Assembly: GCF_902459465.1 (NCBI RefSeq)
Contig: NC_047070.1
Coordinates: 19,654,001-19,718,000, forward strand
Direction of reading: 5' to 3'
Origin: Asterias rubens
Taxonomy: Eukaryota
Length of the DNA stretch: 64,000 nucleotides
The position numbers were made by a program, and so were the translations under genes. Shown one piece after another: positions 11,053 through 58,300 of this stretch; position 1 is the stretch's first letter, and every line of letters begins with the position of its first letter. A model generated the notes under the pieces. The model was not told where the DNA came from and made no database searches. It worked only from the letters and a program-made list of their open reading frames with translations.

Positions 11053-13970
11053 ATGGCAGCCAGCTCCCTTCAGATCACTCGGCGGGAGGATGGCAGCTAC
11101 CTCTACGAGTTCACCTCTCACAGCCAGCACATCTTGCAGACACTAAACGAATGCCGTCAGTTCCCCCGGCTCTGTGACTGCACCGTCCTGGTCGAGACCC
11201 GAACCTTTAACACCCACAAGGCTGTCTTGATAGCCTGCAGTGACTACTTCAAGAGTTACTTCACGACCCTGCCGGATGTCTCTGGCCAGCCGATCGTCCT
11301 GGAGAATGTCAGCGCGCGGGGCTTCCACCTCCTTCTTGAGTTTGCCTACACGTCGAGGATGTGTCTTACCATGGCAGTCATGGAGGATGTTCTCTCAGTG
11401 GCCGTCAATCTAAAGGCAGCGTCTGTCCTGGAAGCTTGTTGTGAGTTCCTGAAGTCTCAACTGACCGGAGATAACTGTGTGGACATCATTTCGGTCGCTG
11501 AGACTTTTAACCTGACTGAGATCAAACGTCAGGCTAATAGGCTCATGTGTGAACGGCTGATTGAGTTATCACAGACATACAACAAGAAAGGCAGTGGGCC
11601 GCTGCTTCCTGATAGTAAAGAAGAGCTGGAAGGTAGGAAATGAAGCAACCTTATCAAAATTGTCATTAATTTTGACTCCAAGGCAAAAGAGCTGTCACTT
11701 ACCCAACATTTCGATCCTAGCAGAGTCTTTTTAAAGCATTTAATCCGTTAAAGGTTTTGCATATAATTACACCTCAAATTGGTTTGGTTGATCCAAGAGC
11801 AGTTTTGTTCAGGGTTTTTCAAATTTTATTTATAATTTGAACATAGTTAAAGTAATGTTGCCCCAGATTTTCAGCAGTTCATTGCATGTTTTAGGGTTAT
11901 AGTTTTTTTATGTAGACTTTTGCATATTAAATAATATTCTGTATGATTTTGATTCAGGTCTTATCAATGCCAATAAAGAAGCCTTAGCAGCCCTGGAAGC
12001 TAATCATCAAGAGAGTTGCGACAGTGAGAGTGAAGACATTGGTGGAGTGGAATCAGACTGTTCCTTCTCAGACATGGTGCCAACAATGATGGGGGACAGG
12101 CTCCGACCCCGCGTACAAACACAACCGCCAAACTTGGACCCTACCAGGGATCGGACACTCAAGGTGGAAACCAAAGCCGCCCTGAAGAGCCCAGTGTTGA
12201 GGGCTCTGAGGCAGCTTCCTCGTAGGAGGGGCAGGCCGAGGAAAACAGAAGCTGTCCAGCGTACAACGAGATTACGTAAGACACTGCGGAACAAGAGGGG
12301 AACCTTTAGCATTGCCAAATCAAGGAAGGAATACATCTGCCGCTTTTGCACGCTCAAGTTCGGCAAGCTAAGAGACCTTAGACAGCATTACATCAAGGAG
12401 CACAGCCAGTGCGACAGATGCACCAAGGTTTTCCGCGCCGACGCCGAGCTAGAACGCCACTTGATATCCCACCAGAGACGTGACACAGCCAGAGGGCCAA
12501 GACGGTATGTCTGCACATATTGCGGCAAGAACTGCGGATACTCATCGGCGCTTAAAATCCACGTTCGAACTCACACCGGGGAGAAACCCTTCAAGTGTGA
12601 CCTATGCAGTGCCCGATTCATCCAGTCCATAAACCTGAAAAGGCATGTCCTCACCAACCACCAGAAAGACACGCCCTACGAATGCAAGTTCTGCGACAAA
12701 AAGTTCAGCGTCTTCGTCTATCTGAAGAGTCACGAGATCACACACAGCAGTGAGCGGCCCTTCCAGTGCGAGACATGCGGCGCCATGTTCAAACGCAAGA
12801 GCGACCTACGCAGTCACAATCGCGTGCACAGCTCTGACAAACCCTTTACCTGCGATATCTGCCTGGCCAAATTCAAGACCACAAACGATCTCAAAACTCA
12901 CTCGCTGATTCACAACGATACCAAGCCCCACACCTGCGATAAGTGTGGGGCGAGCTTTAAGCGGACGGGCCACCTTAATAGACATATGATGATCCACAGT
13001 AACAATAAACCGTACCAGTGCGAGACGTGTGGAGCACAGTTTAATCGCAAGGAGAACCTGCGAAGTCACCAGCGTATTCACAGCGGTGAGCAGCCGTATA
13101 AGTGTAGCTTGTGTGGTGCTAGCTTCAGACATCTCAGTAGTATGAAGATACATGAGAAGAACCACTGGAGGTAGGTTTCTGTAAAACAAAATTTTTGATT
13201 ACACATTAAACAGCACAATAAGCGCAAATAACAGGGTTAATAGGAAGTGTGGGAGGAAAACCCATGCAATCAGGTAGGGACTGAAAAGCCCAATCGACAT
13301 GCAAGGCTCTGGTTTGAGGTGGGACTCGAACTGGGGTCCACAGAAGTGAAACTTCCTTCCTCGTCATCTCTCCATTGGTTACTTGGCTAGTACAGTTTGC
13401 TTTTCTGATAGCTCTTAGTTAACAATCTAAATAATAAATGAAATGAAAATGATATTATTTGGGGGTATTTTTGTCTGGTTTTACAGCCAGAGAACAGGTG
13501 CCCAAGACACTTCTATGATGAGTCAACACGACGGTGGGTCCCTCCAGCACATCGCTGCACTCATGGGTCTACCAGTACAAGGCCTCTCACTGCCCCCTGG
13601 CAACAACATCCCAGTCAGCCTCCAAGTCAACACCGATGCCCAGAACCAACTCTCCATCCAGCCCAACCACGCCCAATCCCCGGACCCCACCCCACCCCTG
13701 CACTCACCAGGTCAACATACCCCAATGAATCTACACGCGCACCAACAGCAGAACCAAGCCTTACAGATGCCCCCGCCCAACTCCACCCTGAACTCCCCGA
13801 TGGCCTCACCCATGTCGATGGCGTCGCGGTCTCCCATGCCCATGGGTCTGATCTCGTCTGCTTCCCAAAACATTCACATAACAACCTCCTCCATGTCGCC
13901 GGGTGTTAACCAGGTTCACCAAGTTCCCAACTTACAAGCTTACATGATGAATACAGCTACCCTAATGTAG
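11053..13970 (+). CDS. BTB/POZ - AT-hook - 10x C2H2 zinc-finger protein (ZBTB-type, ZBTB24-like architecture), 758 aa
   Basis: Exons 11053-11632, 11958-13170, 13487-13970 (2277 nt, phases 1 and 2 match). BTB (CDCTVLV...HKAVLIACSDYF), AT-hook PRRRGRPRK at 12218-12244, ten C2H2 fingers with TGEKP-like linkers, and a P/Q/S/M-rich C-terminal tail. Confidence 0.92.
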
Positions 13971-38221: not shown

Positions 38222-39353
38222 CTTGCAAAATTCTAGAATTATGCTCTGATATTTTGTGCGAAGTTGTCTTTGTTATTCAGGCAGGTGTGAAATATATTAA
38301 CGTCATGGACAGACAACGTGTCCTTGGTCAGCTGTGAATGTACGTGTGCATCACATACGTCAGTTACCGTGCATGTCGTGCAGAACGCATGGCACAAAAC
38401 GTGCCCACAAATAAACTGAATACTGCCACCAAGTGCTGAGGTCCAGATTTCACATTTTTTGGTGGGAGGGCGGGGAGAAGGGGGGGGGGTAGCCTGAACA
38501 TCTTACGTCACACTTCGAGAAGACAGAACCCAGTCTAAGGGGGGGGGGGAGGGGGGGTACTAACATTTAAAGGTGGTCTTGCTTTTGAGATGTCGTTCAA
38601 AATCCAGGATCAAAACTCATATATTTGTCCTCTACCACATTACTTCATGTGATGATTCTCAACTTTGACCCGAAAGCTCCTGTACTTCGAACCAGACTTG
38701 TTATTGCCAGTAATTTCAATGTGTAAGATTAAAGATATAGTTCTTTACAGAACGCCCCCCCCCCCCAAGAAAACAAACCATAAACAACAACAGCGACAAG
38801 CCACTCCAATAAACAAACAAAAACGACAACAACTTATTTTCAAATTTCTGTTTTATTATCACCTCTTTATTTGTGTCATGTTGTAAGTGTTAATCATTTA
38901 ACTCATTATTTTACCAGGTACAATATTTGTATTTGTGTATACTTTGCATTGCCAAGAATAACAGGTTATATAATATTTTTTTGTGGTACACTAGAACTTC
39001 TTGAAAAATTAAGGTTCAATATCATTGTCTAAAGTTTGGTCACCAGTTTCCTTATTCGCAGTAAGTAGTCTTCATGATTGTTAAGTTGATTTTATTCACT
39101 AATTAATTTGTTAATATTGTTTGACTATAATCTTTTTCGCCGTGTAGTTTTCCCGCCCAACATTTTTGAAAAATATACCGGTAGGCCTACGTTGTAAATA
39201 AATGAACACTAAGTACCCCCTACCTGTTTGGTAACTGAAATTTTTGTTCTAATTAAGAAGCAGTAAGAGAACCTGATGTGATTCATCAATTCGATAGTTA
39301 TAGACAAGAAAAGATAATTGAAAAATGGATATTGTAAGGCCGATAAACAGTTT

Positions 39354-42300
39354 CTAAAGGCAGTTGCACATCTTCTCAACTGGTGTTGATGGGGGTTGCA
39401 CTTCGGTCTGTCTCTCCTCTTCTGTAACCGGTAAGTTGGCATCGATTTCCTCTTGGGTTGACGGTCCTGGTTCTGGTTCAGAAAGGGCCTTCTCGGTGAT
39501 CTCCTCCGTCTTATTGCTGGCTTCATTGGTGTCTGTCTTCTGGCTTTTCTTTAGGGCTGTCTTGTGAAGGAGCTCCCCTCCGCCTACACGCTCGTAGTAG
39601 CCGAGTTTGTTGAAGAAAGGATCCCCCAGGGTGTCGTCATTCTCTCTCCCCGTCTCCCCGGGCTTCATGCCGTCGGCAAATCTCACACGAGTCTCGGTGT
39701 TGTTCTCATTCTTACTCGATGAAAGCCTGAGGTCTGAGGTAGAGGCCCTGTTTTCCTCCAGAAAGGCAGTGGGGTTGAAAGCATCTTCGTCCAGTTCTTG
39801 AGCGGGTCGAGTGTTCATGACTTCATCGATCTCACGTTGGGCTTGTTGCTCTTTTTGCTCCTGGATTATAGCAACCTGTATCTCTGGGTTCTCCTGCTGT
39901 TCGCTTGTGATTTGAGGTACCCATGCATCTTGATCGTATAACAAATCCTCGCCACTGTCGACACCGAAGTCTTTCGATGTTTGGGTGGCAACTGACTGCC
40001 CTGTACTGACAGCTAAAGGTGTGGGTTTGTAATAACTTGCACTGCGGTTTACCTCCTCGGCCTTCTCTTCATGCTGGGCGGGGGTATCTTGTTTTGGAGT
40101 GCTGTCAGGGAACGACACGAACTGTCCAGTGCGCACCATTTCTCCGTAGACGTCCGCCATCATGCTGTCAGCGTAGTGCATCAAGGCGTTGTAGGGTCTA
40201 TTACCGGTAAACTTCGGCATCATACGTTTCATGTCGCGACGAAATCCGTACGTGCACTGGGTGACACCTTTGTTTTGATTGGTGGACTGGGAGGTGATTG
40301 CTTTACTGCGCGAGTCCTCTTTGAAGCCATCCATACGAACTTCAGGTTCTTGCTTCTCCAACATAGCGGCAGAAATGCGATCCTTTGAGATCCCTCTGGT
40401 CGAGGTGTCCGTGTGAGCCTCTTGGTTTTCGTATGCGTGTGCAGTTGGGGTCGCTGCAACACGGGGTAAGTTGGCATCCCGGTGCTTCGGTCTGGCTTGT
40501 TGTGAGGAGGTCTGTTCTTGAGAACTGTTAATGAGTGAAGCTACGAAGTCAAAACTCTGGTTCTCGATTTCTTCTTCAGCCATTGCAAGTCTGATCGCAT
40601 CGAACATGTTCATCATGGCGTCACGGTGACGAGTTGCCAGGAACTTTGGAAGTGCCTTCTTGATCTCAGCCCTTCGAGCGTACGTATAGCTAGAGTTGAG
40701 GAAGCTCCCCGCCCCTTTGGTCTTGTTGGATCCTTTTGGAGAAGCCTTGACTGCTCGAGCTTTAGGGGATTTCGTGGAAGTAACTTCAGTCCTGAAGTCA
40801 GCATCATCGCGAGTATCAAAGAGAGCATCTTGATCCAACTCTACCTTGTCTGGAAGAGCCTTGGCTACAGTGCGTCCAACTGGTGCAGCGACCACATCCA
40901 TGTCTCCACTGATAGCCCACTGCGCGGCACACATCAAGGCCTTGACATTGGCTGACACGCTGTACCTCCTCATGGATGCTTTGTTAGCCTTCCTCAGTGC
41001 ATAGGTGTTGGCTGTGCTCTGTGATTCCCCATCGGTGTCGGCGAAGCGGTAGTATACCTGATTTCGCCGGTCTGGTGCCGGCTTGTTGCCGGTGGGTCTA
41101 CTACGGTTACCGCCAGGTTGAGTATTAGCTTTCTTAGTAGAAGCCGGGGACTTATCAACAGCTACCTCTTTGCCAAGTTCCTTAACCTTAGCAACACTGA
41201 GACCAGCACTTCCTGGCTTTTTACCAGAAGATAGCTTTCTACCGGTCTCCTTGAAGTGACGCATGGCAATTTTCAGAATGTGCTCGACGATGAATCGGGC
41301 CTGACGGCGTAGAGTCGTCTCGCTGACAGTGGTACTGGTAGTACCGGCACCACGTTTCTTCGTACGGGAAACTTTCTTGTCTTGGTCGAGAGAAGTTTGA
41401 GGAAGCTGCCTAATCCTCCGAATCAACCGACTGCAAAAGAAAGGATAAAAAGGAAAACTAAATCTCTTTTCTGTAAATCCATTCCATGAGTGTTGTTATG
41501 GGGTCATCAGATCCGGGCTTGACTCAAATAAAAATGTAAATCAACCAGGAGATGGTTGCAAGTCTGTCACGTAAAAACGTGCACGGTCAAGGTGCTCGTT
41601 CCTTATTCACAACACAATACAATGTGGAACTACTCTCGTTATGCATCTGGTTTATATACTTATTCAGCTTTGACGTTAGTCAGTTAACCAGGAGCTGGCT
41701 TCTTATTCACTAACGGTAAATCAATCGGGAATTGGTTCATAGGTATATCAATAGTGAACCGGAAACTTGATTCTTATTCTCATGGAAATCAATATAAAAG
41801 AGGGAACTTTTCATTCATAATAGTGTTTGGCCCAATCGAACACTAATTCATGAAAGATGTTGGTTTGAGAGCACCAAAACAAAAGATAACGAACCTAAGT
41901 ATATTTAAACAAAATAATAAACTTTGAAGGTTAATAATGAAATACAAAATGTGAAAAATTACTTTTCGATCCTCTTGATAACTTCATCGATAAGAAAGTC
42001 AATGTCCTGAGGAGTCCCACATGGTTTGCCCTGTACAAATCTATCCAGAAGCTCCCCCATCTTACTAGAATTTCCCAGGCTGGTCTGCCGTACGGCATCC
42101 GCCAGATCTGTTATGAAGAAAAAGAGTACATAAAGGTGTACCCCCACTAAATACATTCCCTAAAGCATACAGTGCAAAACATTCAAAAATACACGAAAAG
42201 TACCTACAAGTCTCGCAGATTTGTTTTTGCTGTAAAGGGGCAATTATTCATTGACTCTTGAACTCTGACCCTCCTCAATTTGGGGGGTCCCTGGGCCCGT

Positions 42301-43216
42301 CGAGTTTATTCCCCCGGGCCTCGAACCCCCAAACGCCCCTACACCAGGGTAATTTTTTTCAAACGTCCAAACATCAACCATGAAAAAATAATGACCCTAC
42401 ACATCTCAGCAAATAGGACCAATTTTGTTGGGCCCAATGTCAACAATTCTTGAATTTTTGTAAAACTGAAACCCTGGGGGTCTCTAATTTGTAGAAGTTT
42501 TCCACCATGACCAACTTTAAATTTATACCATGCCAGGGTTTACAGGAGACGGTTTGTGTCAACGGTGGACTTTTTAATAATAACAATAATGATAATAATA
42601 ATAGGACTTGATGCGCACATATCCACCCTGCTGGGTGTTCAAGGCGCAGTAAAACCAAAACCAAACAAAAACAAAACAAAGAAAAACAGACACAACAAAA
42701 TTAGTCATTGAAAACCTGTGACATAAGATAAGTTTTGAGAAGAGACTTGAATTTTGTGGTACAAAGACAAGATCTAAGATTAAGTGGTAGAGAGTGCCAG
42801 AAGAAAACGACCTGTCACCCCATGAGTGTCGAGACTTGGGTTCAATGAGGAGAAGAATGGAACTTGATCGAAGATTCCTTGATGGAGTGTAAACTTGAAG
42901 CAGTTCAGAAATATAGTGGGGAGCCTTGCCATTAAGAGCTTTGTGGACAATGAGCATTAGCTTGAAGATGATTCGTTGAGAGATAGGGAGCCAGTGTAGT
43001 TGTTTCAGAATGGGGGTGATAGAACAGGATTTTCTAGACAGTGTCACAATGCGGGCAGCAGTATTTTTGAGACGATGCCAATAACAGCGGGCGGCTCACC
43101 GGTTCGTTTTGGGTTTTTTTTGTTATCACAAAAGGAAGTCGAAATTTGTTAACATTCTAACAAATAATACTTGAAGTAAAACAATTCAAAATCTACTTAC
43201 TTTGTTTACGAGTCAT
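39354..43216 (-). CDS. Uncharacterised 745-aa, largely low-complexity protein; candidate A-kinase anchoring protein
   Basis: Exons 43216-43201 (accATGa, AAA|gtaagt), 42107-41963 and 41430-39354 (2238 nt, phases 1 and 2 match, polypyrimidine acceptors). The 2077-nt exon is stop-free and GC-rich against an AT-rich background. No known domain recognised; the first exon is the least certain. Confidence 0.82.
42575..43075 (-). mobile_element. L2-clade LINE 3' fragment in intron 1 of the uncharacterised gene
   Basis: SITPILKQLHWLPISQRIIFKL...APHYISELL...RNLRSS...WGDRSFS, a classic L2 C-terminus, followed by an (ATT)n tail. Confidence 0.88.
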
Positions 43217-44820: not shown

Positions 44821-47800
44821 TCATAACTTCACTGGTGTGTTGATGCACCGTGTTTTCCTGAGGCAACACCACCAACCACGTGACTGCATACGTCGACGGA
44901 TAGGAATAAAACAGAGTACCAGTGAGCAGCAAACGAAGCTTGTACTAATGACAATGAGGCTGACTACGTAATTACCAGTGACGTCAAATAAACCACCTGC
45001 GAAAATAAAACAAATATTAAGGGATTATTTGAATTGATCGTTATAGCAGTTTTGGTGATGGGATTTGAGGCATTGCAGGATGGGGTATCAATACAAGGGT
45101 CAGGCAACTTGGAGGCAACCAACTGCAGTGTATGCTACAGGACCACTTTGGTAGCGTGGGTCATTTTCCAAACATCGTCTTATACGATCCCACAGAAAAA
45201 TAGATGAACATTGAAATATGAATGTTCTTCTTGTTTGAGATATTGCCTGATTCCGGTAAATTGCTCGTGTAACACTACCCTACGGTTATGAAAATACCTG
45301 ATATAGGAGCGTTGAGCAACCCTCCCAAACCATATGGAAACATTGCTAGAATCATCACTCCATTGGCACTGTACTGTCTGAAGAGATCGGCTGCTATAAC
45401 GTTAGATGTACCAAACGCTACTGATCTCGTCACTCCAGCTGCTACAATATAGAAAAGTAAAAAGGGAGAGATGATTCGCCAATGGATGAAATAGACCTTT
45501 GGTGCAGCCATCTTGAATTTCTCCCATTGATATCAATGTTACTTATGTCCTGATTGGCTGTTTTGTATACATGTATGCGCTTTTGATTGTGTTACCTTTC
45601 TAAATGTTCACATTTAATTATTTCCCAAACAGAGTATGGAATAAACGTCTTATTTAATTGATAAGTCACTTTCCCAAGACACAATCAATCCGACTTACCC
45701 AATGCCAAGATAATAGATTCCGTGAAAGTCTGGACGATCGTCATTAATCCGAACAAGACGGTCCCCACGAGCATCGAAGCAGAGGCGCAGTAGATCTCCT
45801 TAACCGGAAGTTTCTTTCCAACGATGGCGATGAGAGCTTTCCCTGCGATGTCTCCTGCTGCGAAGAGCATAATGACCAGGGCGGTTTGTTCACTGCTTAG
45901 ACCTCGGCCATCCAGATAACTTGCCTGTTTGAGAATGGAGGAAGACAATTGGAGAACCCATTCTTCAGATTAACTGCTTTGCCAGGTACATATGTATATC
46001 ACTATTTTATTTTTCATATTTACATCCCATTTTCAGCAGCGTTGTTGCTGTTTGTAAGTTGTTTTGTGAATTGAATTGAATCACCCATCATGTGACGTCA
46101 TTAGTGCGAGCATCGTCTTCATATAATACTTACGAAATTTATGACGAAAAAGGTCCAGCCGAACGACAGGAGAATGATTGCGATGGTCCACAACCACGTG
46201 TCCAGACGTCTCACCATGTGACATACCTCCCAATGGCAAGAGCAACAACCTCGTCCCTCTGTCAACCTCGTCTCTTTGTCAGTTTCCATTTGAATATTCC
46301 CACCGTTATTATCTTCTTTGTCTTGAAGATCCACATTCATCGTCGACGTTTCTTCTGATCCGGCTTCAGAGTCTTTATCATCCTCTCGTAGAGAAATATG
46401 TTCCCTTTCACCTTCTTCTTTGATTGCTCGCTGTTTTTCCCGATGCCGCGGATCGTCGCTTGTTGGTGGCGGTTCAACGAGAAACACTCCAAAGGCGAAG
46501 CTGAGAGCCAAACATCCGCCGGCGACAAACCTCAACGACGCCCGCCACCCGAAGCGCGCAAAAGACGCTGTGAGTATGGGGCTGAAGACGAACATTCCTT
46601 CAGAGACGGAAAACCAAAGAAAAAGCTTTTAAATTGTTAAATTGTGGATAATAAGATAAACAATATCGTAGAAAGATGGCCTAGATTTTAAAATGGAAAC
46701 ATGTCTTTGTTCAAAGTAATACTTAGACATTAAGTTAATAATACCAAGTGGGAACCTTTTTCATTGCATGCTATGTACAATTGCTATTCATACAATTTTG
46801 TGTTTTTGCCACAATTAGGTTTGAACAAATTTGAGTATTACCTATAGATGATCCCATGGATACGATTGCATTGGCGCGAACATAATCTCTGTCTGCAAAC
46901 CAGTTGAGGACAACCACCGATGCCGCGTGGTTCACGAAGCTATTTCCGACTCCAACACCGACTCCGTAAGTTATGATGGCATATTTCACGGACGGAACCA
47001 ATGACGTCATCACAATTCCTGCACACAGGATGCATTGCCCCAGTAGGGTCATCGTACGATTCGTTATCCGATGAAGAAGCAGGGCGTCAAATGGACTTCC
47101 AAGGAAAGTCAGCGACCAAGCTAATGAACTCGGCCATCCTATACCGAACAACAACAAAAAATGTCAGTAGAATTTGAAACTTTGCATGGTAGAAATACGA
47201 TATGGAAAGGCTTGTGGTAACACCATGTCATGACTATCTCTAAATGAGTTGGGTCGGTTTTAACTCGACGTGTCGATCAGTATGCTCTGATCGTCTTCTG
47301 GAGAAAGCGGAAAAAAATGTTATTGTCAAATCAACGGGTAAACTGGTCCCCTTAATATTCAGCCACAAGGATGATGGCAGGTATTATTAATAGTGAGGTT
47401 TAGCTGCACGTTATACGCGAGCAAAAACGTGAACGTAAACGTCAACAAATTGTGTCATTCCTAGGTGACGTCAACACTGTGTGCCTTTTTCAGGCTCACG
47501 TATGACGTCTGCACGTACTTACCTGACGTGAAAATAAAATTTAGATTATGCTTAAACATGAGTGTACTTTCTCTTTTACACGGAAAGAAATCAATCTTGA
47601 GAAGTCAATGTCACTATAGATTTACCTGTAAGAGCAGCTCCTGAACCAAACTCCTCTTGTAAACTCACAAATAAAATGCTATAGTTCTGCAAAAAACCCA
47701 GGACGATGAAAAACTGAATCGCCGATGAGACTGTTACAACCCAATGCCACCAGCCAGAATATAATGTCTTCAATCTCAGGCGCATCATTATGCCTTCTTC

Positions 47801-55300: not shown

Positions 55301-58300
55301 GTAGCGTCCACATGCTTCTCAAAAAGGTATTTTAAAATGTTCCATGGCTGTGCAAATTCATGTGGGTTATTACAATAAGATATCCCAAATTGGGTTACCT
55401 AAAAGATATCCCAAATGGGTATTCACAAGATATCCCAAATGGGGTGTCCTGAAGATATCCCAAATGGGTGTTCACAAGATATCCCAAATGGGTATTAATA
55501 AGATATCCCAAATGGGGTGTCCTGAAGATATCCCAAATGGGTATTCACAAGATATCCCTTGTGGGGTGTCCTGAAGATATCCAAAAAGGGGTGTCCTGAA
55601 GATATCCCAAATGGGTATTCACAAGATATCCCAAATGGGGTGTCCTGAAGATATCCCAAATGGAGTGTCCTGAAGATATCCCAAATGGGTATTTACAAGA
55701 TATCCCAAATGGGTATCCGAAAGATATCCCAAATAGGTTGTTGTGGAGATTTCCAAAATGGTATCCACAAAAAATCCCAAATGGGTTACTTGAAGATATC
55801 CCAAATGGATACTCAGAAGATATCCCAAATGGGTGTCTTGAAGATATCCAATAATGGTATCCACAAGATTTCTTTGTCAAGGTATTAATTTTTTATAAAA
55901 TAAGTGTATCAGGAATTTAAGACAGCTTGTCTGAAATGTTGTGGTTTGATTCATTCCACAGCTCCAGTTTTTATTTGAGCTTCCAGCCAGACTCAAGAAA
56001 TGCATTGAGATGAAAGCGTACAGCCAGGCTGTCAGGTGAGATTAGTTTGTAAAGGCTGAGTCACACTGCAGCGATAAAGAAAACGAAAACGATCACGGTT
56101 GAATTGCTCCGCACAGAATACGCCCATCCTCATTCAACCAATCAAGGGCGTGCATTGTTAACATTCTTGTTTTTGCGTTCTCTTTATCAAGGCCTGTGTG
56201 ACCGGACCTTTAGGGTCAAGCGGTCTTTAGTGCATGATACTCAAGTGTTGGCATAAGTCCTGTTCGTAACACATTTACCTTTTAGCTAGAACTTAAAATA
56301 TTTGTCATTACGGAAAGCTCCATTGAAGATTTTCTTTCCCCCATTTTGGAAATTAGCATTGGCTGAAGGAGGTTTTATTCAAAAGAGGGCGCTATCGGAA
56401 GCATTTTGTACATACTGAGTTGACTGTATGGGAGGGACACAGAATCTTGGGGCGGAGGGACAGAATCTCCTGCCACATCGGCATGTGAAACCAGATATTG
56501 CCGGTCCAAGTCCCACTCAAGTCTTTCTTTCCTTTGCTCAGCCCCTAATTATTTGTACAAAATTGTTCCAAGGGTTTTAATAACTGATGTTCATAACATG
56601 GAATGTATGCACAGGTACTATGTGAAGGCCAGGGCTGTCTTACTTCAGTATCAGCACATGTCATCGTTCCACGGCATTCAACAAGACTGCAATGAGATTG
56701 TCAATGAGCTACGTACAAAACTCAGAGAGCAATTCGGCAATCGAGAGGTACTAACCTAGAGCCCAGTTACACCCACCCCTTACTATTAAGATTACATATC
56801 TTTATCCTAGTTACTCCCACCACTTACCAGTCTTTATCTCAGTTACACCCACCCCTTACCAGTCTTTATCCCAGTTAAACCCACCCCTAACTGTTAAGAT
56901 TACCAGTCTTTATCCCAGTTACACCCACCCCTTACCAGTCTTTATTCCAGTTACACCCACCCCTTACCAGTCTTTATTCCAGTTACACCCACCCCTAACT
57001 GTTAAGATTACCAGTCTTTATCCCAGTTACACCCACCCCTTACCAGTCTTTATTCCAGTTACACCCACCCCTTACCAGTCTTTATTCCAGTTACACCCAC
57101 CCCTTACCAGTCTTTATCCCAGTTACACCCACCCCTAACTATTAAGATTACCAGTCTTTATCCCAGTTACACCCACCCCTTACCAGTCTTTATCCCAGTT
57201 ACACCCACCCCTTACCAGTCTTTATCCCAGTTACACCCACCCCTAATTGTTAAGATTACCAGTCTTTATCCCTGTTACACCCACCCCTTACCAGTCTTTA
57301 TCCCAGTTACACCCACCCCTAATTGTTAAGATTACCAGTCTTTATCCCAGTTACACCCACCCCTTACCAGTCTTTATCCCAGTTACACCCACCCCTTACC
57401 AGTCTTTATCCCAGTTACACCCACCCCTTACCAGTCTTTATCCCAGTTACACCCACCCCTTACCAGTCTTTATCCCAGTTACACCCACCCCTTACCAGTC
57501 TTTATCCCAGTTACACCCACCCCTTACCAGTCTTTATCCCAGTTACACCCACCCCTTACCAGTCGTTATCCCAGTTACACCCACCCCTTACCAGTCTTTA
57601 TCCCAGTTACACCCACCCCTTACCAGTCTTTATCCCAGTTACACCCACCCCTTACCAGTCTTTATCCCAGTTACACCCACCCCTTACCAGTCTTTATTCC
57701 AGTTACACCCACCCCTAACTGTTAAGATTACCAGTCTTTATCCCAGTTACACCCACCCCTTACCAGTCTTTATTCCAGTTACACCCACCCCTTACCAGTC
57801 TTTATTCCAGTTACACCCACCCCTTACCAGTCTTTATTCCAGTTACACCCACCCCTAACTATTAAGATTACCAGTCTTTATCCCAGTTACACCCACCCCT
57901 TACCAGTCTTTATCCCAGTTACACCCACCCCTAACTATCAAGATTACCAGTCTTCATCCCAGTCCTTAAAGACGAAAATTATTTTTGTTTTATTCATTTT
58001 TCAAAAAAGCTACAGCACTTCAGCAAGTAATATTTTAAGGGAAGTTTTCTACCATTAACTGTGTGAGTTTGTTGTAAAACTGTGGATATTGTGTTTTGTG
58101 TCCTTCAAAAAGTACCCAGACCCTTTAATGTTTGTACATGGTTGACTCGGCAATCAACCATTAATATTTGTCCATCCCTCTTTAGTCGAGTGCACAGCAA
58201 CTTGCAGAGAGTGTGGATCTTCTTCTTCAGTTAAAGGAACCACCGGATGAACTCTGCGATGAATTCCTCTCTCAGTAAGTAATTTTGCAAAGCAGTGTAG

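What the first reader, a model, noticed from the sequence alone, without database searches (positions are those of the whole stretch)
39354..43216. Uncharacterised 745-aa protein with four PKA-anchoring-type amphipathic helices (candidate multivalent AKAP)
Seen: in a mostly low-complexity chain there are four helices: IDFLIDEVIKRI (41968-42003), LRRQARFIVEHILKIA (41265-41312), IENQSFDFVASLINSS (40521-40568) and LMHYADSMMADVYGEM (40137-40184). PKA-type sites RKLS and RRYS are also present. Known: the RII-binding consensus is [AVLISE]xx[AVLIF][AVLI]xx[AVLI][AVLIF]xx[AVLISE] (AKAP-IS IEYLAKQIVDNAIQQA), which the first three match. The fourth follows the RI-selective LxxYAxxhhxxhhxxh spacing of RIAD (LEQYANQLADQIIKEA). 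AKAPs are often disordered and encoded by one large exon. Inference: an unannotated dual-specificity PKA scaffold. The consensus is permissive, so single matches are weak; the case rests on four matches against a disordered background.
Basis: partly seen in the sequence, partly recalled or inferred. Interest (0 to 1): 0.8.

Follow-up and report, generated by a model that had tools for sequence, protein, structure and literature searches.

The report
Sea-star orphan protein with AKAP-like helices
This is a real, transcribed gene found only in sea stars; it encodes a mostly disordered protein in which three of the four reported helices are conserved and fit published sequence rules for anchoring protein kinase A, but binding is untested.

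Summary
The gene is real. It has three exons on the minus strand (43216-43201, 42107-41963, 41430-39354) and encodes 745 aa. An RNA contig joins exons 2 and 3 and runs into exon 1, and the Patiria orthologue has the same exon structure. An exhaustive profile search finds relatives only in sea stars (Asterias amurensis, Patiria, Acanthaster, one fragment), all named 'uncharacterized'. There is no Pfam, PDB or fold match. AlphaFold2 calls about 80% of the chain disordered.

Helices 1, 2 and 4 are conserved and meet the published AKAP hydrophobic-face rule at 7-8 of 8 positions. Helix 4 also carries the RI-type Tyr-Ala motif in all four sea-star sequences. Helix 3 is not conserved and fails the stricter rule. 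RRYS is conserved; RKLS is not.

My reading is a candidate lineage-specific multivalent AKAP-type scaffold, at about 0.35. The sequence evidence fits but is permissive, and R-subunit binding could not be tested here.

The parts
43201..43216 (-). Exon 1 (ATG plus 13 nt; residues 1-5 and the first base of codon 6)
   Evidence: Sequence and GTAAGT donor. The 8 loose letters of the X1 RNA contig beyond 42107 equal the end of this exon. Orthologues start MTRKQN/MSLKQN.
41963..42107 (-). Exon 2 (residues 6-54, N-terminal helical unit including most of helix 1)
   Evidence: AG acceptor and GT donor. The RNA contig covers 41963-42107. The Patiria exon is equivalent, with the same phase.
39354..41430 (-). 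Exon 3 (residues 54-745 plus stop)
   Evidence: Open frame. RNA contig with joint 41430|41963 and CT..AC ends on the + strand.
38992..39353 (-). 3' UTR (at least this far)
   Evidence: The X1 RNA contig extends to 38992.
41421..42006 (-). Helix 1, residues 40-57 (DIDFLIDEVIKRIENRLI), split by intron 2 (41431-41962). Acidic amphipathic helix, 7/8 AKAP-face positions.
   Evidence: Identical pattern in Patiria. Conservation in the top 6% of windows. AF2 helix 38-62, pLDDT 72-85.
41250..41315 (-). Helix 2, residues 93-114 (TLRRQARFIVEHILKIAMRHFK). 8/8 AKAP-face positions, but net basic.
   Evidence: 8/8 kept in Patiria and Acanthaster. AF2 helix 87-117.
40908..41015 (-). Repeat R1, residues 193-228 (helix-loop-helix), containing the conserved PKA-type site RRYS (40959-40970)
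   Evidence: Internal-repeat statistics on the Patiria orthologue P0001: R1-R3 z 7.7, R1-R2 z 5.9. RRYS/RRFS conserved. AF2 helices 190-205 and 211-226.
40560..40703 (-). Repeat R2, residues 297-344. The most conserved block of the protein.
   Evidence: R2-R4 z 8.6 in the Patiria orthologue. AF2 helices 301-318 and 322-342.
40521..40568 (-). Not conserved.
   Evidence: Matches the permissive regex only in this species. Below 7/8 on the stricter rule. Average conservation.
40119..40256 (-). Repeat R4, residues 446-491.
   Evidence: YA..hh..hh..hh is kept in all four sea-star sequences and is expected 0.003 times per shuffled protein. Conservation in the top 9%.
39972..39995 (-). Conserved short block SVATQTSK (residues 533-540), function unknown
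39654..39689 (-). RVRFADGMKPGE (residues 635-646): conserved RVxF-type PP1-docking-like motif
   Evidence: VRFADGxxPGE is invariant in three species. The motif reading comes from general knowledge of [RK]x(0,1)[VI]x[FW].
39561..39617 (-). FFNKLGYYERVGGGELLHK (residues 659-677): very conserved block, predicted beta-hairpin, function unknown
   Evidence: AF2 strands 648-652 and 656-660 in P0005 numbering.
39357..39368 (-). C-terminal CNCL (residues 742-745): invariant, possible lipidation site, not a canonical CaaX
   Evidence: Invariant in the window, A. amurensis, Patiria and Acanthaster.

Best explanation
SHOWN: a three-exon gene is spliced and transcribed, very abundantly in one RNA library and almost not at all in others. 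It is restricted to sea stars at detectable sequence similarity and evolves fast. It encodes a 745-aa intrinsically disordered protein punctuated by conserved short modules: an N-terminal helical unit, a long basic helix, three copies of a novel ~40-aa helix-loop-helix repeat, an RVxF-like motif, a hairpin block and a C-terminal CNCL. INFERRED: the protein is a multivalent AKAP-type scaffold. Conserved amphipathic helices 1 and 2 (RII/dual-type face) and helix 4 (RI-type, Tyr-Ala motif) would dock the D/D-domain dimers of PKA regulatory subunits, or of related D/D proteins. The conserved RRYSV site in repeat R1 would be a local PKA substrate. The RVRF motif would bring in PP1 as the opposing phosphatase. 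The terminal cysteines might tether the scaffold to membrane.
For: The gene is real: splice joint and exon-1 continuation in an RNA contig of word depth 876, against about 0 in two other RNA runs; orthologues; the same exon structure in Patiria. Helices 1, 2 and 4 reach 7-8/8 hydrophobic residues at positions 2,5,6,9,10,13,14,17. That is the published AKAP interface (PMC12083921), and they keep it in Patiria and Acanthaster. Seven such windows were found against 0.87 in shuffles (P=0.001). Other long predicted helices of the same protein (first helices of the repeats, R2b, 552-575) do not reach 7/8, so the pattern is not automatic. Helix 4 carries the [F/Y]A determinant of type I AKAPs in the RIAD register, conserved in 4 of 4 sequences. 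The helices sit in disorder, the usual AKAP context. The PKA site RRxS followed by a hydrophobic residue is conserved. Language-model neighbours of the whole protein, of the N-terminus and of the R4 region repeatedly include AKAP-type sperm proteins: FSIP2-like for the whole protein, AKAP4/AKAP3/AKAP14 for the two parts. Scores are 0.48-0.61, so these are leads only. Nearly all nonsynonymous differences from the sister-species transcript fall between the modules.
Against: No binding test was possible. The patterns fit many amphipathic helices, and the nulls used are residue shuffles, not real helical proteins. There is no Pfam hit to RII_binding_1, AKAP_110, AKAP28 or any other family. Helix 2 has net charge +3, extra hydrophobic residues at 'polar' positions 4 and 12, and invariant Arg/Lys on the polar face. 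That differs from most known RII-binding helices, which to my knowledge are acidic, and it suits calmodulin, membrane or bundle packing equally well. Helix 1 belongs to a predicted N-terminal three-helix unit, and helix 4 to a predicted hairpin, so their hydrophobic faces may be buried. Atlas scores are below the level the tool itself calls meaningful. CNCL fails the canonical CaaX rule.
Confidence: 0.35

Rival explanations
1. This is a lineage-specific gonadal or other tissue-specific disordered protein. Its conserved helices and helix-loop-helix repeats pack on each other, within or between molecules, or bind a partner unrelated to PKA. For example, calmodulin or membranes could bind the basic amphipathic helices. 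The AKAP-like spacing is then just the generic 3.6-residue periodicity.
For: Helix 4 is one copy of a repeated module whose other copies lack the YA pattern. AF2 draws each repeat as a hairpin and the N-terminus as a three-helix unit. Both faces of helix 2 are conserved, and it is basic. The best-conserved blocks (R2, hairpin 659-677) have no AKAP reading. No AKAP family match.
Against: AF2 confidence for the hairpins is only about 50, and no fold match exists. This reading does not explain the conserved YA register or the conserved RRxS site. It names no specific partner.
Confidence: 0.35
2. The helices dock non-kinase D/D-domain proteins (SPA17, ROPN1L, RSP-type or DPY-30-type dimers) in cilia, flagella or gametes rather than PKA itself.
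For: The D/D superfamily has 18 members that bind AKAP-type helices, and many are ancient and ciliary or spermatic (PMC8339350). Atlas neighbours are sperm-tail proteins: FSIP2-like, AKAP3/4, AKAP14, SPATA19, TEX33.
Against: The same lack of any binding evidence applies. The tissue of the one high-expression library is unknown, and if it is the ovary data set it would not fit a flagellar role. The Atlas scores are weak.
Confidence: 0.1
3. This is not a functional protein-coding gene: a chance ORF, a pseudogene or a non-coding transcript.
For: High nonsynonymous:synonymous count among the listed differences from the sister-species transcript (16:10). Low-complexity composition. No homologues outside sea stars.
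Against: A 745-codon open frame is kept across Asterias, Patiria and Acanthaster, with blocks of up to 90% identity and conserved intron positions. Indels relative to the transcript are in frame (+12 nt, -3 nt). The spliced mRNA is abundant.
Confidence: 0.02

Closest known systems
AKAPs as a functional class, especially multi-helix and dual-specificity ones (AKAP220, SKIP) and the RI-selective smAKAP; disruptor peptides AKAP-IS and RIAD
   Same: Three conserved 18-residue amphipathic helices embedded in disorder, with hydrophobic residues at 2,5,6,9,10,13,14,17. One has the Tyr-Ala determinant in the RIAD register. There is more than one candidate site per chain, and there are possible phosphatase-docking and lipid-anchor motifs.
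   Different: No sequence homology to any AKAP family. Binding is untested. Helix 2 is basic. According to PMC12083921, RI-selective AKAPs arose with vertebrates, so this would be an independent invention in sea stars.
AKAP3/AKAP4 (Pfam AKAP_110) and FSIP2, sperm fibrous-sheath proteins
   Same: They are among the nearest language-model neighbours: FSIP2-like for the whole protein and the R4 region, AKAP4 and AKAP3 for the N-terminus and the R4 region. They are long, fast-evolving and largely disordered, with several amphipathic helices. From memory only, the R4 helix resembles the RI-tethering 'LMVYANQV...' segment of AKAP4.
   Different: Pfam AKAP_110 and RII_binding_1 do not match, even at E<=10. 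The exhaustive HMMER profile search returns no chordate protein. The Atlas scores (0.48-0.61) are below the tool's own threshold for meaning. Sea-star sperm have no fibrous sheath (general knowledge).
Uncharacterized sea-star proteins XP_071793276.1 (Asterias amurensis), LOC119739588 (Patiria miniata) and LOC110977028 (Acanthaster planci)
   Same: True orthologues, with the same modules in the same order and the same C-terminus. Patiria has the same three-exon structure.
   Different: Patiria and Acanthaster keep a fourth repeat (R3) within a stretch of roughly 100 residues that Asterias has lost. The A. amurensis model differs over residues ~505-558 in a way that looks like a frame change in that annotation. 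None has a described function, and no paper mentions them.

Membership tests
AKAP (functional class) | A 14-18-residue amphipathic helix with hydrophobic side chains at positions 2,5,6,9,10,13,14,17 (PMC12083921) | tested here: met
   Helices 1 (7/8), 2 (8/8) and 4 (8/8), kept in Patiria and Acanthaster. Helix 3 fails.
AKAP (functional class) | Direct high-affinity binding of the helix to the D/D dimer of PKA RI or RII | not testable with these tools
   No complex prediction or binding assay was available.
Type I (RI-selective) AKAP helix | [F/Y]-Ala motif at the N-terminal end of the helix, plus the hydrophobic face (PMC12083921) | tested here: met
   YA..MM..VY..MV at residues 473-486, kept in 4 of 4 sea-star sequences and expected 0.003 times per shuffled protein. 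The YA lies in the second turn, as in RIAD. Positions 17-18 of that register are G-Q, not hydrophobic.
Pfam AKAP_110 (AKAP3/4), RII_binding_1, AKAP28 and other AKAP domains; FSIP2 | Significant match to the family profile | tested here: not met
   hmmscan of the window protein at E<=1 and of the orthologues and their conserved pieces at E<=10 returned no AKAP-related family. The profile search of 1.84 billion proteins returned only sea-star sequences.
RIIa / DPY-30 D/D domain (considered for the N-terminal unit) | Profile or fold match to the helix-turn-helix D/D domain | tested here: not met
   No Pfam hit, no PDB sequence hit at E<=10, and no Foldseek hit with E<3 in PDB or AFDB-SwissProt.
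PP1-interacting proteins (RVxF docking) | [RK]-x(0,1)-[VI]-{P}-[FW] motif in a disordered region, conserved | tested here: met
   RVRF here and RSVRF in Patiria and Acanthaster, inside the invariant block VRFADGxxPGE. The motif is permissive and binding is untested.
CaaX-prenylated proteins | C-terminal Cys-aliphatic-aliphatic-X | tested here: not met
   The C-terminus is C-N-C-L. Asn and Cys are not aliphatic, although X=Leu and the tetrapeptide is invariant. Lipidation remains possible but is not canonical.

The most novel reading that the evidence does not exclude
Sea stars independently evolved a multivalent, dual-specificity PKA anchor. It has an RI-type Tyr-Ala helix and two RII/dual-type helices on one disordered, possibly lipid-tethered scaffold that also docks PP1, and it is expressed at very high level in one tissue (possibly gonad). 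This would show that RI-selective anchoring determinants are not a vertebrate invention, and that new AKAPs arise de novo from repeated helix-loop-helix modules.
Probability: 0.2. Interest if true: 0.6.

Novelty: new member of a known kind. Interest (0 to 1): 0.4.

Why it matters
If binding is confirmed, this would be the first echinoderm-specific AKAP. It would also be an example of convergent evolution of the RI-selective Tyr-Ala determinant, which a 2025 survey (PMC12083921) places at the origin of vertebrates. Sea-star oocytes and embryos are injectable and optically clear, so the anchoring hypothesis is directly testable. If it is not confirmed, the gene is still a clean example of a fast-evolving, taxon-restricted disordered protein in which selection is concentrated on short modules, including a previously undescribed ~40-aa repeat.

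Tried and rejected
(1) Pfam on the window protein, the orthologues and each conserved piece, up to E=10: only chance-level hits.

(2) Word-indexed search and exhaustive HMMER profile search: sea-star sequences only, with no urchin, cucumber, brittle-star, crinoid or chordate relative.

(3) N-terminal unit as an RIIa/DPY-30-type D/D domain, prompted by an apparent ELL...P.D...F spacing: no Pfam, PDB-sequence or Foldseek support. Rejected.

(4) Homology to AKAP3/AKAP4/FSIP2: supported only by weak language-model neighbourhoods and by my memory of the AKAP4 sequence. I had no tool-supplied AKAP4 sequence to align, so it stays a lead.

(5) Full-length AF2 with a 6-row alignment: pLDDT 38.7, useful only for locating helices. 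Atlas structure hits were all TM<0.2 for the whole protein.

(6) Literature search for the LOC and XP identifiers, and for sea-star AKAPs: nothing.

(7) Tissue of the high-expression library X1: ids are coded. X1 belongs to a multi-species 2014-15 study. The whole-ovary data set of Reich et al. 2015 (PMC4368666) fits that description, but the link is not verified.

(8) Tau/MAP2-like PGGG repeat for the hairpin block: the GGG is GSG in Patiria and Acanthaster. Rejected on sight.

(9) Canonical CaaX: not met.
Full report
WHAT IS THERE. The minus strand between 43216 and 39354 carries a three-exon gene: exon 1 at 43216-43201, exon 2 at 42107-41963 and exon 3 at 41430-39354. It has canonical GT..AG introns and a 2238-nt reading frame of 745 codons.

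The gene is expressed and spliced as modelled. In run X1 a 2621-nt RNA contig covers 38992-41430. It jumps directly to 41963-42107 (skipped ends CT..AC on the + strand, which is GT..AG on the minus strand). It then continues for 8 letters that are the reverse complement of the end of exon 1. Its word depth is 876 in a small library. Two deeply sequenced RNA runs of the same species label have only one or two reads on the exons, and another has depth about 3. Expression is therefore strong but restricted to some tissue or stage.

X1 belongs to a multi-species study of 2014-15. A whole-ovary echinoderm data set of that date that includes Asterias exists (PMC4368666). I could not verify that X1 is part of it, so the tissue remains unknown.

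RELATIVES. The word-indexed search found two 'uncharacterized' proteins, from Patiria miniata (887 aa) and Acanthaster planci (831 aa), at 37-40% identity. I then searched an alignment-based HMMER profile against 1.84 billion cluster representatives. It returned only sea-star sequences: the Acanthaster/Patiria cluster, a fragment identical to the window, and a 162-aa fragment from assembly GCA_014845345.1. The cluster-mate of the window's own fragment is Asterias amurensis XP_071793276.1 (728 aa, about 96% identical).

The window therefore comes from an asteriid sea star. At the level HMMER can see, the family is confined to Asteroidea. The Patiria gene has the same three exons with the same intron phases. 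No paper mentions any of these identifiers. Pfam gives nothing, for the window protein at E<=1 and for the orthologues and their separate conserved pieces at E<=10.

ANATOMY. AlphaFold2 with the small family alignment predicts a mostly disordered chain: mean pLDDT is 38.7 and 597 of 728 residues are below 50. The predicted and conserved elements are:
- An N-terminal unit of three helices (residues 1-62, pLDDT 72-85).
- A long helix at about 87-117.
- Three helix-loop-helix pairs (190-226, 301-342, 444-486).
- A non-conserved helix at 552-575.
- A short beta-hairpin at 648-660.

The conserved blocks in the alignment match this map. They are the N-terminal unit, helix 2, the three helix-loop-helix pairs, SVATQTSK, VRFADGxxPGE, FFxKLGYYERVGxGELLHK and an invariant C-terminal CNCL.

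The three helix-loop-helix pairs are copies of one module. In the four-copy Patiria orthologue, Smith-Waterman scores against shuffles give z=7.7 (R1-R3), 5.9 (R1-R2) and 8.6 (R2-R4). Patiria and Acanthaster have four copies. Asterias lacks R3 together with its flanks, roughly 100 residues in all.

The protein evolves fast. Among the listed differences between the window and the X1 transcript, 16 are nonsynonymous and 10 synonymous, and there are two in-frame indels. Ten of the nonsynonymous states equal the A. amurensis residues, and only one (I342V) lies in a conserved module. Constraint is therefore concentrated on the modules.

The permissive RII regex matches three times (helices 1, 2 and 3), against 0.42 expected in residue shuffles (P=0.015).

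I also applied an independent, structure-based definition from Falcone et al. 2025 (PMC12083921). It requires hydrophobic side chains at positions 2,5,6,9,10,13,14,17 of an 18-residue helix, and for RI-selective AKAPs an [F/Y]-Ala motif. The results:
- Helix 1 (residues 40-57) scores 7/8, helix 2 (97-114) scores 8/8 and helix 4 (469-486) scores 8/8.
- All three keep these scores in Patiria and Acanthaster.
- Helix 3 does not reach 7/8.
- Seven qualifying windows were found, against 0.87 in shuffles (P=0.001).
- Helix 4 has Tyr-Ala followed by hydrophobic pairs at the right spacing, in the same register as RIAD. This is kept in all four sea-star sequences and is expected 0.003 times per shuffled protein.

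Other long predicted helices of the same protein do not qualify, so the pattern is not automatic.

Conservation ranks are top 6% for helix 1, top 9% for helix 4, top 24% for helix 2 and average for helix 3. The two strongest peaks, R2 and the hairpin block, are not AKAP-like. Of the two PKA-type sites, RRYS is conserved (RRFS/RRYS, followed by Val) and RKLS is not.

WHAT ARGUES FOR CAUTION.
- The nulls are residue shuffles. Real amphipathic helices fit such patterns often, and I had no proteome to calibrate against.
- Helix 2 is net +3, has extra hydrophobic residues at positions 4 and 12, and has invariant Arg/Lys on its polar face. Most known RII-binding helices are acidic (my knowledge), and such a helix would equally suit calmodulin, membranes or packing in a bundle.
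- Helix 1 is drawn as part of a small N-terminal helical unit and helix 4 as half of a hairpin, so their hydrophobic faces might be used within the molecule. Confidence for the hairpins is only about 50.
- I considered that the N-terminal unit might itself be an RIIa/DPY-30-type D/D domain. There is no Pfam, PDB-sequence or Foldseek support, so I dropped that idea.

A soft, independent lead comes from the protein language-model Atlas. I queried the whole protein, the N-terminal 125 residues and the R4 region separately. The nearest clusters repeatedly include AKAP-type sperm proteins: FSIP2-like for the whole protein and the R4 region, and AKAP4, AKAP3 and AKAP14 for the N-terminus and the R4 region. 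All scores (0.48-0.61) are below the level the tool calls meaningful. Neither Pfam AKAP_110 nor the exhaustive profile search links the families. I treat this as resemblance, not homology.

MOST LIKELY MECHANISM. I commit, at about 0.35, to an AKAP-type docking scaffold. In this model, conserved helices 1, 2 and 4 are exposed in a disordered chain and recruit D/D-domain dimers. Those dimers would be PKA RI for the Tyr-Ala helix and RII or either isoform for helices 1 and 2, and could include non-kinase D/D proteins (PMC8339350). The conserved RRYSV site would be a local substrate, and the conserved RVRF motif would recruit PP1. The invariant CNCL might be lipidated, although it fails the canonical CaaX rule.

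What is shown: the gene, its expression, its restriction to sea stars, its disorder, the modules and their conservation, and the fit to published sequence criteria. What is inferred: every binding step.

The main rival, also at about 0.35, is that the helices and repeats serve another partner or self-association, and that the AKAP-like spacing is generic.

NOVELTY AND SCORE. AKAPs are a polyphyletic functional class, so if this reading is true the protein is a new member of a known kind, carried by a protein family and a repeat that have not been described. It would be of moderate interest. The 2025 survey places RI-selective anchoring at the vertebrate origin, so a sea-star Tyr-Ala helix would be a convergent case, and sea-star oocytes make it testable. 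Because the decisive binding evidence is missing and the criteria are permissive, I score interest at 0.4.

Noticed in passing
window 42574-43047 (minus strand, inside intron 1 of the gene): A 157-codon ORF with the conserved C-terminal motif of a non-LTR retrotransposon reverse transcriptase (..LHWLPI..RI.FK..). All four RNA runs pile up here, with many loose ends, which indicates a dispersed, transcribed repeat rather than an exon of this gene. No Pfam hit.
   Followed up: partly
protein P0005 (Asterias amurensis XP_071793276.1), residues ~505-558 of the window numbering: The annotated A. amurensis protein differs from the window over about 50 residues in a way that looks like a frame change. 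It loses the SVATQTSK block, which the window, Patiria and Acanthaster all keep. The X1 transcript has an in-frame +12-nt insertion at 40072 in the same area.
   Followed up: partly
window 11053-13174 (+): ORFs with a BTB/POZ domain (E 3e-26) followed by seven or more C2H2 zinc fingers, in a GC-rich stretch (GC 0.51). This is a BTB-zinc-finger gene.
   Followed up: partly
window 46119-46595 (-): An ORF with a weak Major Facilitator Superfamily match (E 8e-7, below the Pfam cut-off). It is probably an exon of a transporter gene upstream of the finding.
   Followed up: no
window 55500-55869 and 56762-57963: Two minisatellites: a 24-nt unit with about 15 copies, and a C-rich 32-35-nt unit with about 30 copies (higher-order periods 108 and 140). 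The second explains the GC skew of -0.42 in that bin and the spurious ORFs at 57247-57858.
   Followed up: partly
locus L002 (ENA metagenome scaffold, sample ERZ23498661): A marine metagenome (DNA) scaffold carries a 111-aa piece of this gene identical to the window, so sea-star DNA is present in that environmental sample.
   Followed up: no
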